Source of the DNA: Macrostomum lignano
Taxonomy: Eukaryota
Assembly: GCA_002269645.1 (NCBI GenBank)
Contig: NIVC01001036.1
Location: 1 to 64,000, forward strand
Reading direction: 5' to 3'
DNA length: 64,000 nucleotides
The stretch's first letter is position 1. Each line of letters starts with the position of its first letter. Below the pieces are notes generated by a model. It ran no database searches, had not been told where the DNA came from, and worked only from the letters and a program-made list of their open reading frames with translations. This document shows, one piece after another, positions 41,705-49,400 of this stretch. A program made the position numbers and the translations under genes.

Positions 41705-44700
41705 AGAAGTCGCCATAGTCGTCATCGAAGCCGTTGCTGCCGGTGAGCTGCGAGTTCATCGAGGTCATAGAATCTGCGCCGGGGATGTACTCCAGAACCT
41801 GCGTGCAGAGGAAGACAGGCATTGATCCCTCTCCCCTCAGATGGGTAAATAAATATTCGCAGAAGGGCTGCGGGCATCCTGGAGCAACCCTTTCAACGAC
41901 ATCGTATGCATACCACAGCCAGCGCTGAAGGCAACTCTGAAGACAGCCCTGACTTTCTAATCGTCAGGCATGTACACTCTCTGTGATTTTGAGGTTGGCG
42001 CCCTGATGGCTGTGAATCACAAGAAAACCCCCAGGCCAAGTTTAGTGCAAAAGCTATAAGATTAGATGCGTCCGCGCACGGATTCGAACCCTTGGCTCCC
42101 CGCGGAGATTGAGTTATTGCCTTGAAAAGCTAAGGATCCCTGAGAATGCATGTAAGATTCAATAAATCCAACGAAAAAATAAAAAACTGAGTTCTTGAAA
42201 ACCGCGATCTCCAGGTTCCGTTACCCGGATAGAACGTCGCAAAAGCAAAAAACAAATTACTTGGCATCTGGCTAAAATTCGAACCCCCACCTGGCCCAGT
42301 CGACCCGTTCGCCCGTACGACAATCCGGGCGAAGTCAGCCGGGCGGGCAGCTGGGCGCCGACAATTTCGTGGTCGCTCTGCGATCTCGGCATCATTGACA
42401 TTCCGCCCGCCACCGCTGATGCAGCCGCAGGCGCCGCCGCCGATGCCACTGGCGACATTCCGGCAGTCGGCGTCGGAGTCGCTGACGGAGACAGAGTTGC
42501 GGAGGCTTCGACGTTGCCCGCGCCGCTGCTGCCGCCGCTGCCGCCGCCGCCGCCGCCGCCGCTGCGAGAGCCTCGCCAGAACAGATGCCGCAAGCCACTG
42601 CCGCCGCGTCGCTTCGATGTCTCCGACGTCGACGCTGCTGGGTTAGTTGACGACGCTGACGCTGCCGACTCGCTTTGATGTCCGGCAACGGCGTCGGCTG
42701 TCTGCGAGCGCGGCAGGTTGGTCGATTTCCATTTCTTGGAGCGGAAAAACAGACGCCGCTTTTTGTCCTTCGGCTTGGCCGCCTCGCCCGCCGAGGCTGC
42801 GCCTGCGGCTGCCGACGCCGAGAGCCCCGCCGATGCGTTGCGGCTGCCGATGCTGTCCGCTGAGGAGCAGGTCGGCAGCTGGTTCGACGACGGACTGGGC
42901 GACGGCAGGCCGGAGCTGCTGAATGGCGCGCCAAGACTGCTGTAGGTTGTTGCCGGGCCTGAAGGTGAGGGAGAGCACCGGGTGTGTCTGTCCCGATGTG
43001 TCTGTCCCGATGTGTCTGTCCCGATGTGTCTGTCCCGATGTGTCTGTCCCGATGTGTCTGTCCCGATGTGTCTGTCCCGATGTGTCTGTCCCGATGTGTC
43101 TGTCCCGATGTGTCTGTCCCGATGTGTCTGTCCCGATGTGTCTGTCCCGGTGTGTCTTTTTTTAATGTGTCTAACTGTCTGTTCCAGTTCGTCCGCCCTG
43201 ATGTGTCTTTTTGTTGTGTCTGACCCAATGTGTCTGTCCTGATGTGTTAGTGAATTAGTGATATATTTCAATTCCTCATCTTGTTTATTTGCAACACTTG
43301 CTACTCACATCCAGTGTGGTCAGTAGTACAAATCAGCTGCTAGGTAGCCAAACTGACTCACCATATTTGTCTCCGTAGAGGCGGCTGCGCAGGTCCATCA
43401 GGCTGCGCAGCTGCTTGCACAGCTCGCTGGCCGAGATGCGCAGCTGGGGCACCTGAAGTTTGGGGGAACAAAAATAGAATGGTTATCTTCACTAGGCCCC
43501 AGATCGAATGCAATCATTGATTTTGTGATTTAAAGGGGACTTTTCTTATCTCAGCAGTGTATTTTTTTCAGGAAATTCGCCCCCTAAGAACTACACTATC
43601 CTTGAGTTTTGCGACCTGTTATGCTACAGTGGTCCTTGGTCCCACTGTTTCCTTAAATGTTCTCCCCCTTAGTGGCATTTTAAGTGAGTCTCCAGTCCAG
43701 ATGCTTTACTGAGCTAGTAGTCCCTGGCTTGGGGATAACTGCTCTAGCTACTCAACACTAATTATGAGCCTCACCTCGTACAGGCAGGACCGCACCAGGT
43801 GTTCCAGCGAGCCGGCCAGCTCCCTGGGCAGCAGGCCGCAGCCCAGGCTGAGACCTTCCTCAGCCAGCAGGTCCCGGCGCCGCTGCCTGCCGCCGCTGCC
43901 GCCGCCGCCGATGGTGAAGGCCGACCAGAGCAGCAGGCCGAACGCCCAGATGTCGGCCGCGGAAGTCGCCACCGAGGCCGACGCCGCGTCGGCCGCCGCC
44001 GACTCCGGGCAGGCCGGACTCACCCGGCAGCAGCGGCGCCACAGCAACTGCACCTGAGGCGGCGGCTCGGAGGACTCAAATCTGGCGAATAACAGGCCGC
44101 CCAGCTTCACTGTGAACCGGTCTGTGCGCTCCATCAGGCAGTTCTCTAGCGTCTGGGAGGAAGGTAAAATACTCTAGCGAGATTTTTTTAATACACCTTC
44201 CCCAATGGCCAGATGTGCAACCGACAGCTCAGCCGCAGCTATTGCGCGGCGCATCTGAAGGCTGCGTACGGCTGTTCAGTCCAAGGACTGGGGGGAGGGG
44301 GGGTCGCCACACACCCTCAGTTACCCCAGCTATTGCTGGCACCCATTTTACAGCTGGGTGAACTGAAGCAATGCAGAGAGTTAAGTGTCTTGCTTAAGGA
44401 CACAAATTGTTCCGAGTGGGTCGGGAATCGAACCCATGACCTTTCAGTAACCAAGGCACAGAGAGTGCATGTGCTCAGGACTCAGGAGGGAATGGCCAGA
44501 ATTGCCGTTGTGGCAGGATGCCAGGCTCTGGCCAGGCCACTCACCAAGTCGCAGTGCAGGACGCCCTTCCTGTGCAGGTAGGCCAGCCCGGCCGCCGCCT
44601 GATGCGCCAGGCTCACCAGGATCTCCCAATCGTGCAGGAGGCGGTCGCCTTGCCGCAGCAAAAACTGTCGCAGGTTGCCGCAGTTGACGTGCTCAACCAC

Positions 44701-47700: not shown

Positions 47701-49400
47701 TTTTGAAGAGGTCCAGTCTCAAAAGCATTTTGAAGAGGTCCAGTCTCAAAAGCATTTTGAAGAGGTCCAGTCTCAAAAGCATTTTGAAGAGGTCCAGTCT
47801 CAAAAGCATTTTGAAGAGGTCCAGTCTCAAAAGCATTTTGAAGAGGTCCAGTCTCAAAAGCATTTTGAAGAGGTCCAGTCTCAAAAGCATTTTGAAGAGG
47901 TCCAGTCTCAAAAGCATTTTGAAGAGGTCCAGTCTCAAAAGCATTTTGAAGAGGTCCAGTTCGAGCACATTTTAAAATTATAACCGCCATCCTGTTTTGT
48001 AAGCTCGGTTCTGGGACGCATCAGCTACCGATAGGAAAGAAAGCGAGATTCTGCATCATTTTCCCACTTGGTCATTTTTCCTGCCAATTTTAGCGAATTC
48101 TAAAGTGGCTGCCGCAATGGCGGTCAGTTTGGGTAGAGGAGCACCGGCACACTGTGTACCTGCTTTTGCTGACCAACCTCTCTTCATTGCAGGACACGGA
48201 AGTTCGGGGCATCCCAGCGGGTGGTGCGACATGAAGACAGTAGCCTCTTTAGCCAACCGGTGCCTGTGGTTTCCCGTCAACTGTGGTTTAGCTTAGGAAA
48301 AGCGGGACACTGGTAGCTAGCTAATTAGCATAATTAATGCGAATTCCAGGCCCACATGTACAGGCCGCCGAGCTGTCAGTCAGGCGGTAGCTGCATTTGG
48401 TGCAATAAATTGGCGATGTTGCACAACATATACAAGGTTCAAGTCGCTACAGATGATGAGGACCCGCTGAAGTTTCCTGTAACTGAATGCACAGTTTTAT
48501 GCTAAATCCCCTCGTTAAATAATCTCCTAGCTAGATAATTCCCTAGCTAGATAATCCCCTAGCTAGATAACCCCCAAGCTGGATAATCCTCTAGACAATC
48601 CTCTAGCTAGATAATCCCCAAGCTAGATAATCCCCAAGCTAGATAATCCCCAAGCTAGATAATCCCAAGCTAGATAATCCTCAAGCTAGATAATCCCCTA
48701 GCTAGAAAATCCCCAAGCTAGATAATCCCCTAGCTGAAAAAATCCCCAAGCTAGACAATCACTAGCTAGATAACCCTTTCGATAGATAATCCCCAAGCTA
48801 GATAATCCTTTAGATAGATAATCCCCAAGCTATATAATCCCCAAGCAATATAATCCCCAAGCTAGATAATCTCCAAGCTAGATAATCCCCAAGCTAGATA
48901 ATCCCCTAGCTAGATAATCCCCTAGCTAGATAATCCCCTAGCTAGTAATCCCCTAGCTAGATAATCCACTAGCTAGATAATCCTTTCGATAGATAATCCC
49001 CAAACTAGATAATCCGATAGCTAGACAATTCCCTATGTAGATAATCCCCAAGCTAGATAATCCCCTAGCTAGATAATCCCCTAGCTAGATAATCCCCTAG
49101 CTAGATAATCCCCTAGCTAGATAATCCCCTAGCTAGATAATCCTTTGGATAGACAATCCCCTATCTAGCTAATCCATAGCTAGACAATCCCATACATTAT
49201 TCGAACTGCAGCCAAATCCCCGGATCAGCAGCCGCCGCACTCACACAAAGGACAGGGCCAGCCTGCGCTTGAAGCTGCGCACCAGGAAGCTGCCCTCCGG
49301 CATCGGGCCCAGCACCGCCGTGGCCAGCAGTGGCGCCATTTCCTGAAAGAACCAGGCCTCCTCCCGGATGTCCGGCATTCGAAATTTGGCTGGATCGTAT
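41076..49400 (-). CDS. SH2 plus tyrosine-kinase-fold pseudokinase with Ser/Ala-rich and coiled-coil tail; exons 49400-49245, 47647-47404, 45670-45564, 44770-44545, 44152-43775, 43452-43362, 42958-42291, 41798-41076
   Basis: All junctions are GT-AG and phase-consistent. SH2: [46 protein letters not shown]. Kinase fold: [94 protein letters not shown]. Confidence 0.9.
41957..42022 (+). repeat. Short dispersed repeat shared with 5633-5700
   Basis: CTAATCGT(C/A)AGGCATGTACACT...ATGGCTGTGAATCAC occurs at both sites. Confidence 0.7.
42982..43150. repeat. 14-bp minisatellite GTGTCTGTCCCGAT
   Basis: About 12 units in a kinase-gene intron. Confidence 0.95.
44190..44455 (-). mobile_element. CORE-like SINE, family B, copy 2, inside the 392-nt kinase intron 44153-44544
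   Basis: Reverse complement is colinear with 26150-26400 from GAAGGTC..GGGTTCGATTCCC to TTGCACATCTGG..TTGGGGAAGGTG. Confidence 0.88.
44830..45390. repeat. 24-bp minisatellite CTAATCTATAGATCTAATGGCTGT
   Basis: About 23 units. Confidence 0.95.
46095..46505. repeat. 30-bp minisatellite TTGTACAGCTGTGTAGATGCGTGGGTTCTA, one CAGCTG E-box per unit
   Basis: About 14 units. Confidence 0.95.
46825..47340. repeat. 33-bp minisatellite GATTGATAGACCGGAAGTGAGTGTATTAAACCC, one ETS motif per unit
   Basis: About 16 units, most containing ACCGGAAGTG. Confidence 0.95.
47675..47960. repeat. 27-bp minisatellite GAAGAGGTCCAGTCTCAAAAGCATTTT
   Basis: About 10 perfect units ending about 27 nt from the acceptor at 47648. 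Confidence 0.97.
48525..49190. repeat. 17-bp minisatellite CTAGCTAGATAATCCCC
   Basis: About 38 degenerate units. Confidence 0.93.

What the first reader, a model, noticed from the sequence alone, without database searches (positions are those of the whole stretch)
43362..49400. Src-module pseudokinase: intact SH2 coupled to a catalytically dead tyrosine-kinase fold
Seen: the Gly-rich loop is replaced by [11 protein letters not shown]; beta3 reads VTAVTRR with no VAVK Lys; HRD is HCD; DFG is GGL. The fold-maintaining elements (alphaC Glu, H.N...[19 protein letters not shown], subdomain XI Arg), the reading frame and 7 introns are intact, and the SH2 keeps the FLVR Arg. Known: loss of the Lys and the DFG Asp defines pseudokinases; the familiar cytoplasmic SH2-linked case is JAK JH2, which is followed by an active kinase. 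Inference: a maintained SH3-SH2-pseudokinase-coiled-coil protein could be an undescribed phosphotyrosine adaptor or decoy derived from Abl/Tec-like kinases.
Basis: partly seen in the sequence, partly recalled or inferred. Interest (0 to 1): 0.8.

Follow-up and report, generated by a model that had tools for sequence, protein, structure and literature searches.

The report
Ancient Tec-like SH2 pseudokinase gene
This flatworm gene encodes a phosphotyrosine-binding SH2 domain fused to a tyrosine-kinase fold that has lost its catalytic residues, and it belongs to an unnamed, apparently unstudied family shared with corals, sea anemones, ribbon worms and acorn worms that descends from Tec/Btk-type kinases.

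Summary
On the minus strand, 49400-43362 contains six GT-AG exons with one open frame encoding an SH2 domain (Pfam 6e-10) and a tyrosine-kinase fold (6.7e-27). The fold lacks the Gly-rich loop, the beta3 Lys, the HRD Arg and the DFG Asp. Two more exons (42958-42291, 41798-41076) add a disordered linker, an 80-residue coiled-coil helix and a P/Q-rich tail, giving about 856 aa and 7 introns. The organism is Macrostomum lignano. No alternative exon restores the catalytic motifs, and no SH3, PH or BTK exon is detectable in the window.

The main new result is that the degeneracy is not lineage-private. Nematostella, Acropora, Lineus and Ptychodera encode 1100-1330-aa proteins with the same SH2-pseudokinase-coiled-coil layout and the same losses (K lost, DFG Asp replaced by Gly, HRD reading H-N/G-E). 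These group with the window gene in 100% of bootstraps. Their N-termini carry PH, a BTK motif and a divergent SH3, which is the full Tec architecture.

The gene is therefore a flatworm member of an ancient Tec-derived pseudokinase family. All members are annotated "uncharacterized", and I found no description in the searchable literature. It most likely works as a non-catalytic, phosphotyrosine-dependent, oligomerising scaffold. This is a new variant of a known kind and of moderate-to-good interest.

The parts
49245..49400 (-). Exon A: possible start codon ATG at 49378-49376 (MPDIREEAW...) and the N-terminal half of the SH2 domain, including the FLVR Arg (49288-49277). The acceptor at 49400 could be a cis- or trans-splice site.
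   Evidence: UniRef model A0A1I8JQY8 (P0001) starts at this Met.
47404..47647 (-). Exon B: C-terminal half of the SH2 (VKHLWI, with betaD4 His), the SH2-kinase linker, and the degenerate Gly-loop [11 protein letters not shown] (47436-47404).
45564..45670 (-). Exon C: beta3 strand VTAVTRR (45637-45617; Lys replaced by Val) and the alphaC helix, which retains its Glu.
44545..44770 (-). Exon D: HANVLRLLG, hinge, alphaD-alphaE, LAYLH, and HCD in place of HRD (44556-44548).
   Evidence: (strongest kinase-profile hit, E 1.2e-15)
43775..44152 (-). Exon E: catalytic-loop LENC (Asn kept), KLGGLLFAR in place of K-x-DFG-x-x-R (44107-44081), a long Ala/Ser-rich activation segment, PE, and [10 protein letters not shown] (alphaF).
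43362..43452 (-). Exon F: subdomain XI (PQLRIS, Arg kept) and the end of the kinase fold.
42291..42958 (-). Exon G (outside the finding's interval): low-complexity Ser/Ala/Gly-rich linker. It carries the polybasic-aromatic motif [17 protein letters not shown] (42764-42714) and a weaker second copy, [12 protein letters not shown] (42596-42561). The donor at 42291 is the better of two in-phase candidates; the other is at 42261.
   Evidence: The F->G junction is corroborated by UniRef fragment P0004. The motif is shared with paralogue P0002.
41076..41798 (-). Exon H (outside the interval): an 80-residue heptad-patterned helix (41669-41430), a Pro/Gln-rich tail, and the TAA stop at 41078-41076.
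   Evidence: Heptad score is 0.9 versus 0.26+/-0.25 in shuffles, with 0 of 500 reaching it. AF2 gives a single helix over residues 44-123 of the exon with pLDDT 93-98.

Best explanation
The interval holds the SH2 and kinase-fold exons of an 8-exon Macrostomum lignano gene of about 856 aa counted from Met 49378. The gene is the flatworm member of an ancient, unnamed eumetazoan family. The ancestral layout of that family is PH - BTK motif - divergent SH3 - SH2 - pseudokinase - long disordered region - coiled coil. In other words it is a Tec-type cytoplasmic tyrosine kinase that lost catalysis, and gained a coiled-coil tail, before cnidarians and bilaterians split.

Shown:
- The gene is intact and has coding-type composition.
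- Every family member lacks the Gly-loop glycines, the beta3 Lys, the HRD Arg, the catalytic-loop Arg and the DFG Asp (always Gly).
- Every member keeps the SH2 phosphotyrosine-pocket residues (betaB5 Arg, betaD4 His) and the structural core of the C-lobe (HRD His, catalytic-loop Asn, APE, alphaF Asp/Trp, subdomain XI Arg).

Inferred mechanism: the protein does not phosphorylate. The SH2 docks it on phosphotyrosine sites. The rigid pseudokinase C-lobe serves as a protein-interaction surface. The coiled coil makes it dimeric or oligomeric, so that it clusters or bridges phosphotyrosine-marked partners. Membrane recruitment is ancestrally through PH/PIP3. In the Macrostomum copies, which show no PH/BTK/SH3 in the available sequence, it may instead go through the polybasic-aromatic motif [14 protein letters not shown] (speculative).
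For: Gene model and domains.

Species: 100% identity to M. lignano UniRef fragments.

Family: an exhaustive HMMER search of 1.84e9 representatives returns Lineus (E 4e-41), Nematostella (1.6e-31), Ptychodera (1.8e-23) and Acropora (3e-19) proteins. Each matches SH2 and kinase in one stretch.

Shared degenerate and retained residues.

Monophyly: 100% of 500 NJ bootstraps. The nearest neighbour is a Tec sequence in about 90% of replicates, against about 2% for Abl.

Tec architecture: Pfam PH + BTK + SH2 + PK_Tyr in Nematostella and Ptychodera. The segment between BTK and SH2 is an SH3 by hhalign (96.5%, E 7.5e-10). The family profile's best PDB hit is BTK SH3-SH2-KD at 199.8 bits, with ABL1 at 191.9.

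Coiled coil.

No alternative catalytic exons.

Constraint: the paralogue P0002/P0006 is 51-57% identical in SH2 and C-lobe but unalignable in the tail except for the basic motif. That is a domain-restricted conservation pattern.
Against: - No functional, expression or binding data exist here.
- The AF2 model of the N-lobe is unreliable (pLDDT <50 for residues 108-170), so occlusion of the ATP site is not shown.
- The Tec sister relationship is not robust: NJ only, 42-48% per bipartition, with possible long-branch attraction to a degenerate crayfish Btk. The BTK-over-ABL margin is small. The window protein on its own hits Fes best.
- The window copy lacks the PH/BTK/SH3 modules that define the Tec layout.
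- Its tail has no significant sequence similarity to the orthologues' tails.
- dN/dS could not be computed because no paralogue or orthologue DNA could be retrieved.
- The catalytic-loop Asn and an acidic residue at the HRD position are conserved, which leaves room for some nucleotide or cation binding.
Confidence: 0.6

Rival explanations
1. Decoy or dominant-negative regulator. The protein's main role is to compete with active Tec/Src-module kinases for the same phosphotyrosine (and, ancestrally, PIP3) docking sites, or to pair with an active kinase domain and modulate it allosterically as JAK JH2 does in cis. On this reading it does not assemble complexes of its own.
For: It has the same module set as active Tec kinases in the orthologues. 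The SH2 pocket residues are retained. The C-lobe surface is conserved.
Against: A long tail with a coiled coil is maintained in all phyla. The orthologues have PDZ-ligand-like C-termini. Both argue for assembly or localisation functions beyond simple competition. No partner is known.
Confidence: 0.2
2. Atypical but active enzyme. The domain still binds nucleotide and catalyses phosphotransfer or another reaction by a non-canonical mechanism, as in WNK (relocated Lys) or CASK (Mg-independent). These examples come from my own knowledge.
For: The catalytic-loop Asn is invariant, and the HRD position is always acidic (Asp in the window copy, Glu elsewhere). A basic pair follows beta3 in most members: RR, KK, LK.
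Against: The Gly-rich loop, the beta3 Lys, the DFG Asp and the catalytic-loop Arg are all missing in all six sequences across four phyla. No compensating Lys is visible in beta2. The alphaC Glu is not conserved in the family.
Confidence: 0.12
3. A Fes/Fer- or Abl-derived pseudokinase, not a Tec-derived one. On this reading the PH/BTK N-terminus of some orthologues was acquired by domain shuffling.
For: The window protein's best PDB sequence hit is the Fes SH2-kinase unit (E 9e-22). Fes lacks an SH3, like the window copy. ABL1 is only 8 bits behind BTK with the family profile. Ptychodera's copy is auto-annotated 'abl-1-like'.
Against: PH + BTK motif + SH3 + SH2 + kinase in that order is the Tec signature, and it is present in both a cnidarian and a deuterostome member. 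In the NJ analysis, family+Abl got 2% and family+Fes/Fer alone about 15%, against about 90% with a Tec neighbour. No F-BAR domain or F-actin-binding domain was detected.
Confidence: 0.06
4. A decaying pseudogene or a gene-model artefact in a repeat-rich, polyploid genome.
For: The public M. lignano models of this locus are fragmentary and mis-spliced (P0001, P0004). The introns are packed with minisatellites.
Against: There are 863 open codons across 8 exons with 7 canonical GT-AG introns. Exonic GC3 is strong (0.79 versus intron GC of about 0.45). The degenerate motifs are ancestral to the family, not recent lesions. A 51-57%-identical paralogue keeps the same domains.
Confidence: 0.02

Closest known systems
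Tec family cytoplasmic tyrosine kinases (BTK, ITK, TEC, BMX, TXK; Drosophila Btk29A)
   Same: The orthologues have the complete PH - BTK motif - SH3 - SH2 - kinase-fold order. BTK is the best PDB match of the family profile. Tec sequences are the nearest neighbours in most NJ replicates.
   Different: All catalytic residues are lost. A tail of 500-700 residues with a coiled coil is added. The SH3 has diverged below Pfam detection. The window copy shows no PH, BTK or SH3 at all.
JAK JH2 pseudokinase domain
   Same: It is a tyrosine-kinase-derived pseudokinase placed next to an SH2(-like) domain in a cytoplasmic signalling protein.
   Different: JAK JH2 is followed in cis by an active JH1 kinase and preceded by a FERM domain. 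JH2 also keeps the beta3 Lys and binds ATP (my own knowledge). Here there is no second kinase domain, no FERM, and the Lys is lost.
PEAK1 / PRAG1 (Pragmin) / PEAK3 pseudokinase scaffolds
   Same: This is the closest working analogy (my own knowledge). They are tyrosine-kinase-like pseudokinases that act as phosphotyrosine-signalling scaffolds and dimerise through helices flanking the pseudokinase domain.
   Different: They are not homologous in architecture. PEAKs have no SH2 of their own, being ligands for the SH2 and SH3 domains of other proteins. Their dimerisation helices pack on the pseudokinase domain. Here the SH2 is built in, and the coiled coil lies about 270 residues downstream of the kinase fold.
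Fes/Fer kinases
   Same: They have an SH2 immediately N-terminal to the kinase domain with no SH3, plus coiled-coil-forming regions elsewhere in the protein. Fes is the best single-sequence PDB hit for the window protein.
   Different: Fes/Fer are active kinases, and their F-BAR/coiled coil is N-terminal. The family-level evidence points to Tec instead.
KSR3 (a pseudokinase family restricted to non-chordate metazoans)
   Same: It is a precedent that a kinase-fold family absent from chordates can be an important, long-overlooked signalling component (PMC10322840, abstract seen).
   Different: It belongs to an unrelated kinase group (RAF/KSR) and has a different mechanism (constitutive ERK activation).

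Membership tests
Pseudokinase (protein-kinase fold lacking canonical catalytic residues) | A recognisable protein-kinase fold | tested here: met
   Pfam PK_Tyr_Ser-Thr at E 6.7e-27, covering profile positions 33-258. PDB TK hits. The AF2 C-lobe is confident.
Pseudokinase (protein-kinase fold lacking canonical catalytic residues) | Loss of at least one of the beta3 Lys, HRD Asp or DFG Asp | tested here: met
   Lys->Val and DFG Asp->Gly. The Gly-loop glycines, HRD Arg and catalytic-loop Arg are also lost. The HRD Asp is retained (HCD).
Pseudokinase (protein-kinase fold lacking canonical catalytic residues) | Lack of phosphotransfer activity and/or nucleotide binding | not testable with these tools
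   This needs recombinant protein. The AF2 N-lobe is too uncertain.
Unnamed PH-BTK-SH3-SH2-pseudokinase-coiled-coil family (Nematostella LOC5521937, Acropora LOC114959827/LOC141879006, Lineus LOC135490620, Ptychodera XP_070558935) | SH2 followed directly by a kinase fold with the family-specific substitutions: no Gly loop, no beta3 Lys, H-x-[DE]-L-x-x-[EDQ]-N, and K-[LVI]-[GS]-G-[FL] | tested here: met
   Motif table. One-stretch HMMER matches.
Unnamed PH-BTK-SH3-SH2-pseudokinase-coiled-coil family (Nematostella LOC5521937, Acropora LOC114959827/LOC141879006, Lineus LOC135490620, Ptychodera XP_070558935) | Phylogenetic grouping to the exclusion of active Tec, Abl, Src and Fes/Fer kinases | tested here: met
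   100% of 500 NJ bootstrap replicates. NJ only.
Unnamed PH-BTK-SH3-SH2-pseudokinase-coiled-coil family (Nematostella LOC5521937, Acropora LOC114959827/LOC141879006, Lineus LOC135490620, Ptychodera XP_070558935) | A long C-terminal tail containing a coiled coil | tested here: met
   An 80-residue heptad helix. The match is positional, not by sequence: the tail shows no significant similarity to the orthologues' tails.
Unnamed PH-BTK-SH3-SH2-pseudokinase-coiled-coil family (Nematostella LOC5521937, Acropora LOC114959827/LOC141879006, Lineus LOC135490620, Ptychodera XP_070558935) | N-terminal PH + BTK motif + divergent SH3 | tested here: not met
   None was detected in the 14.6 kb upstream or anywhere else in the window. 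One BTK-like string at 55521-55399 is probably chance. Lineus also lacks PH/BTK, so this feature varies within the family. Off-window exons cannot be excluded.
Tec family kinases | PH domain and BTK zinc motif | tested here: not met
   Absent from the window. Present in the Nematostella and Ptychodera orthologues.
Tec family kinases | SH3-SH2-kinase 'Src module' | tested here: inconclusive
   SH2-kinase is present, but there is no SH3 in the window. The orthologues have a divergent SH3.
Tec family kinases | A catalytically competent kinase domain | tested here: not met
Fes/Fer kinases | An N-terminal F-BAR/FCH domain and an active kinase | tested here: not met
   No such domain in the model or the orthologues. 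The catalytic residues are lost.
JAK family (JH2) | A pseudokinase followed in cis by an active JH1 kinase, with an N-terminal FERM domain | tested here: not met
   The only kinase-like ORF segments in the window are the model's own exons. Pfam on the full model gives SH2 + one PK_Tyr only.
Abl family | [quoted passage not shown] | tested here: not met
   No SH3. Catalytic residues are lost. Family+Abl has 2% support.

The most novel reading that the evidence does not exclude
A whole family of Tec-derived, SH2-bearing, coiled-coil pseudokinases has existed since before the cnidarian-bilaterian split and is retained in Cnidaria, Spiralia and Ambulacraria. It is apparently missing from vertebrates and from the standard ecdysozoan models, and it has never been named or studied. 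If so, it would be an ancestral, non-catalytic component of the animal phosphotyrosine/PI3K signalling toolkit. It could be tested directly in tractable models: RNAi in Macrostomum and knock-down or CRISPR in Nematostella.
Probability: 0.5. Interest if true: 0.7.

Novelty: new variant of a known kind. Interest (0 to 1): 0.58.

Why it matters
Pseudokinases are now recognised as allosteric regulators and scaffolds. The catalogue of tyrosine-kinase-derived ones, however, rests largely on vertebrate kinomes: JAK JH2, ErbB3, PTK7, EphA10/B6 and the PEAKs.

A stand-alone SH2-pseudokinase that keeps the Tec module order, lost catalysis more than 600 million years ago, and still conserves its SH2 pocket and C-lobe would add a new class. 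It would show that the 'reader plus dead writer' design arose very early in animal phosphotyrosine signalling. It would also give experimentalists an entry point in organisms with working genetics (Macrostomum, Nematostella).

For genome annotation, the current labels ('uncharacterized', 'abl-1-like', 'Src42A-like', 'BMX-like', 'Tyrosine-protein kinase') are inconsistent. They wrongly imply activity.

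Tried and rejected
1. Genomic or transcript context of the Macrostomum copies: the look-up of encoding contigs has no record for P0001 or P0002. No paralogue DNA was available, so no dN/dS.
2. Taxonomic breadth and names through the word-indexed 5.8e9-protein search. The full-domain profile was swamped by generic kinases and returned only Macrostomum plus unrelated plant and metagenome kinases. 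The SH2/N-lobe-only profile returned only Macrostomum. Neither recovered the XP_ orthologues, so the distribution rests on the top-150 list and is a lower bound.
3. SH3, PH and BTK exons in the window: tblastn with canonical and family N-termini, a canonical SH3 HMM with positive controls, and family SH3 and PH/BTK HMMs. All were negative.
4. A BTK-motif-like 'W-L-C-C-x10-C' ORF at 55521-55399 on the correct strand (E 0.07; it is the only such pattern in about 100,000 six-frame residues). I rejected it as probable chance. Its GC3 of 0.51 is below every 41-codon window of the CDS, the His ligand is out of register, it contains a short direct repeat, and a BTK-only HMM does not rank it.
5. The multi-stretch top HMMER hits (P0003, P0005, P0008-P0023 and others) are tandem multi-kinase proteins that score by repetition. 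They are not family members.
6. AF2 of the SH2-pseudokinase unit, intended to inspect the ATP pocket: the N-lobe has pLDDT <50 with the 6-sequence alignment, so no conclusion is possible. Foldseek against the PDB gave only generic SH2-TK hits (Abl/Fes/Src, TM about 0.4).
7. Rfam and ARAGORN on the tRNA/SINE-looking piece of intron D/E: nothing significant.
8. Literature: no paper describing this architecture was found. The two most relevant surveys, Kwon et al. 2019 (pseudokinome) and Liu et al. 2011 (SH2 census), are not held. Prior classification in those papers or in KinBase cannot be excluded.

Full report
**1. What is in the sequence.**
The window is eukaryotic DNA with GC-rich exons and introns dominated by minisatellites. 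On the minus strand I built a splice model. Six exons lie between 49400 and 43362: A 49400-49245, B 47647-47404, C 45670-45564, D 44770-44545, E 44152-43775 and F 43452-43362. Each has a polypyrimidine-AG acceptor and a GTRAG-type donor, and together they give one open 400-codon frame. The outer limits coincide with the finding's coordinates.

Two further exons complete the gene. These are G 42958-42291 and H 41798-41076, with a TAA stop at 41078-41076. The total is 863 codons from the exon-A acceptor, or 856 from the first Met at 49378. The whole gene has seven GT-AG introns. Exon GC3 is 0.69-0.90 while intron GC is 0.33-0.55. This composition contrast supports a real coding gene independently of homology.

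**2. The observation.**
Pfam finds SH2 (E 6e-10) and PK_Tyr_Ser-Thr (E 6.7e-27). The best solved-structure match is the Fes SH2-kinase unit, aligned end to end. I aligned the protein against active Tec, Abl and Fes sequences and mapped the motifs to window coordinates:
- Gly-loop glycines replaced: [11 protein letters not shown], 47436-47404.
- beta3 Lys replaced by Val: VTAVTRR, 45637-45617.
- HRD reads HCD: 44556-44548.
- Catalytic-loop AAR-N reads TLE-N.
- K-x-DFG reads K-L-G-G-L-L: 44107-44081.

Retained residues are the alphaC Glu, the HRD His, the catalytic-loop Asn, [12 protein letters not shown], the subdomain XI Arg, and in the SH2 the FLVR Arg and the betaD4 His.

**3.
*Alternative exons.* I searched an HMM of active SH2-TK units, plus motif scans, over every stop-free segment of both strands. 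The only hits were the model's own exons. No GxGxxG, VAVK or DFG segment exists. Four 'HRDL' strings lie inside a tandem repeat at 19-20 kb.

*A following active kinase (the JAK case).* There is none.

*SH3.* None is found anywhere in the window. A canonical SH3 HMM gave a best E of 2, while half-domain controls scored about 1e-12. tblastn with canonical SH3s and with the family's own N-termini, and family-specific SH3 and PH/BTK profiles, were also negative.

**4. Organism and close copies.**
UniRef fragments from Macrostomum lignano match at 100% over correctly spliced stretches. P0001 covers the N-terminal part, with one mis-called splice. P0004 covers the C-terminal part and confirms the F->G junction.

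A paralogue is represented by P0006 (SH2 and N-lobe) and P0002 (C-lobe and tail). It is 51-57% identical in the domains and equally degenerate, with HNE and V-S-G-L-E. Its tail is unalignable except for a shared polybasic-aromatic motif: [15 protein letters not shown] in the window copy and [16 protein letters not shown] in the paralogue. Conservation confined to domains and one motif is the pattern expected under purifying selection. dN/dS itself could not be computed because no paralogue DNA was retrievable.

**5. The key result: an ancient family.**
An exhaustive HMMER search of 1.84 billion representative proteins returned four proteins of 1038-1200 aa from outside Macrostomum (1164-1331 aa in their longest isoforms). 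Each matches SH2 and kinase in a single stretch. They are:
- Lineus longissimus LOC135490620 (Nemertea).
- Nematostella vectensis LOC5521937 (Cnidaria).
- Acropora palmata, A. millepora, A. muricata and A. digitifera (Cnidaria).
- Ptychodera flava XP_070558935, labelled 'abl-1-like' (Hemichordata).

All others are 'uncharacterized'. Every one of them lacks the Gly-loop glycines, the beta3 Lys, the HRD Arg, the catalytic-loop Arg and the DFG Asp (always Gly). Every one keeps the SH2 Arg and His, the HRD His, the catalytic-loop Asn, APE, the alphaF Asp and Trp, and the subdomain XI Arg. The HRD Asp is Glu in all except the window copy.

With the window gene they form one clade in 100% of 500 NJ bootstraps. 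The catalytic death therefore predates the cnidarian-bilaterian split. The degenerate motifs here are ancestral characters of a conserved family, not signs of decay.

**6. Origin of the family.**
The long Nematostella isoform and the Ptychodera protein carry Pfam PH and BTK-motif domains N-terminal to the SH2. Acropora full-length isoforms show the same region. The segment between the BTK motif and the SH2 in Nematostella, Acropora and Lineus is a divergent SH3 by profile-profile comparison (96.5% probability, E 7.5e-10). PH-BTK-SH3-SH2-kinase in that order is the Tec-family signature.

The family profile's best PDB hit is the BTK SH3-SH2-KD construct at 199.8 bits. ABL1 scores 191.9, ITK kinase domains about 166 and SRC about 164. 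In the NJ analysis the nearest neighbour of the family includes a Tec sequence in about 90% of replicates, against about 2% for Abl. No single bipartition exceeds 48%, and attraction to a degenerate crayfish Btk is a caveat. I conclude that a Tec origin is the best-supported reading, mainly on architecture, but it is not proven.

**7. The tail.**
Exon H encodes an 80-residue, Pro-free, heptad-patterned stretch (model residues 667-746; 41669-41430). Its crude heptad score exceeds all 500 shuffles. AF2 from the single sequence predicts one continuous helix there with pLDDT 93-98. The orthologues also have long coiled-coil-like tails, weakly similar among themselves (Ptychodera versus Nematostella, E 2.7e-5) but not to the Macrostomum tail.

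**8. Structure.**
AF2 with the six-sequence family alignment gives mean pLDDT 62.7. The SH2 (about 80-90) and the C-lobe are confident. Residues 108-170 (linker and beta1-beta3) are below 50. Nothing can be concluded about the nucleotide pocket. Foldseek returns only generic SH2-TK structures.

**9. Mechanism (inference).**
The combination is an intact phosphotyrosine pocket, a conserved but catalytically stripped kinase C-lobe, an oligomerising helix and, ancestrally, a PH/BTK membrane-targeting unit. This fits a non-catalytic, phosphotyrosine-dependent scaffold that clusters or bridges partners at membranes.

In Macrostomum no PH is visible. The polybasic-aromatic motif about 60 residues after the kinase fold could substitute for it in membrane binding or calmodulin binding, but that is speculation.

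The rivals are a decoy or allosteric regulator of active Tec/Src kinases, an atypical enzyme, a Fes- or Abl-derived origin, and a pseudogene or artefact. Their evidence is set out in the Rival explanations section.

**10. Novelty.**
Full-text searches with several vocabularies found no description of a PH-BTK-SH3-SH2-pseudokinase-coiled-coil family. I also read the holozoan tyrosine-kinome classification, the Fasciola kinome paper and the Schistosoma TK review, and none describes it. The two most pertinent surveys are not in the held library, so earlier classification cannot be excluded.

Pseudokinases and SH2-adjacent pseudokinase domains are known kinds. A stand-alone, Tec-derived, coiled-coil-tailed one is a new variant. 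A recent precedent is KSR3, a non-chordate pseudokinase that turned out to be functionally important (PMC10322840, seen).

**11. Limits.**
- The taxonomic distribution is a lower bound, because only the top 150 hits were shown.
- Absence from vertebrates and ecdysozoans is an impression from that list, not a demonstrated loss.
- The 5' end of the Macrostomum gene is undefined.
- The exon G donor has an in-phase alternative at 42261.
- The phylogeny is NJ only.
- No expression or biochemical evidence is available.

Noticed in passing
window 42983-43157, 44841-45389, 46096-46503, 46829-47342, 47674-47960, 48505-49191; upstream 49706-50339 and 51041 to ~58300: Almost every intron of the gene is largely filled by its own private minisatellite, with periods of 14, 24, 30, 33, 27 and 16 bp. 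The 27-bp array is 100% identical across 10.6 copies. Upstream lie an (AATC)n array and several kb of CT/GA-rich repeats with extreme GC skew.
   Followed up: partly
window 55521-55399 (minus strand): An ORF reading RSLCDNELTSLESLERHSFNWMEWLCCRREGLSSAKVCFSV matches the PH-end/BTK-motif part of a family profile (E 0.07). It has the W-x-CC-x10-C zinc-motif spacing, which is unique in about 100,000 six-frame residues, and it lies on the right strand 6 kb upstream of the SH2 exon. Its GC3 (0.51) is below that of any CDS window, the His ligand is out of register, and a BTK-only HMM does not rank it. It is probably chance, but transcript data should check it.
   Followed up: yes
window 42764-42714 and 42596-42561 (minus strand): A polybasic-aromatic motif, [17 protein letters not shown], is conserved with the Macrostomum paralogue only. 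A weaker second copy reads [12 protein letters not shown]. It resembles membrane- or calmodulin-binding basic/aromatic clusters. It is absent from the orthologues under the same criteria.
   Followed up: partly
Orthologue proteins P0152 (Nematostella), P0163/P0164 (Acropora), P0151 (Lineus), P0155 (Ptychodera): Their extreme C-termini (-PQTTL, -PQTTL, -KVTLL, -TESNV) all fit the class I PDZ-ligand consensus S/T-x-hydrophobic-COOH. The window protein ends in -HSDA, which fits poorly.
   Followed up: no
window 37768-38052 (+ strand) and ~34916-35254 (+): Troponin-family coding exon(s) on the opposite strand, downstream of the gene's 3' end (Pfam Troponin, E 8.8e-12).
   Followed up: partly
window 31414-30833 (minus strand): A 194-aa multi-TM ORF with a weak rhodopsin-type GPCR match (7tm_1, E 1.1e-4, below the gathering score).
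   Followed up: partly
window 15602-16609 (+) and 25416-24259 (-): Two long ORFs of 336 and 386 aa with no Pfam match. The first begins with a signal-peptide-like segment and is Cys-rich. The second is acidic and low-complexity.
   Followed up: partly
window ~44290-44450 (intron D/E): A segment that looks like a tRNA-derived SINE, with a box-B-like GGTTCGATTCC on the minus strand. ARAGORN finds no tRNA, and Rfam gives only a chance-level snoRNA hit.
   Followed up: yes
P0054 (Procambarus clarkii XP_045581263, 'tyrosine-protein kinase Btk') and P0017 (Branchiostoma hybrid XP_078669492): The crayfish protein is a full PH-BTK-SH3-SH2-kinase Tec homologue with HRN and G-N-F in place of HRD and DFG, which is an apparently independent degenerate Tec. 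The amphioxus protein has two SH2-kinase units, and the first reads K-L-S-G-F-H-L-A-R at the DFG position like the family described here.
   Followed up: no
UniRef models P0001 (A0A1I8JQY8) and P0004: The public M. lignano gene models split this locus into fragments. P0001 reads the start of exon D in the wrong frame ([13 protein letters not shown]). P0004 shifts frame inside exon G. The paralogue-conserved basic motif supports the frame used here.
   Followed up: yes
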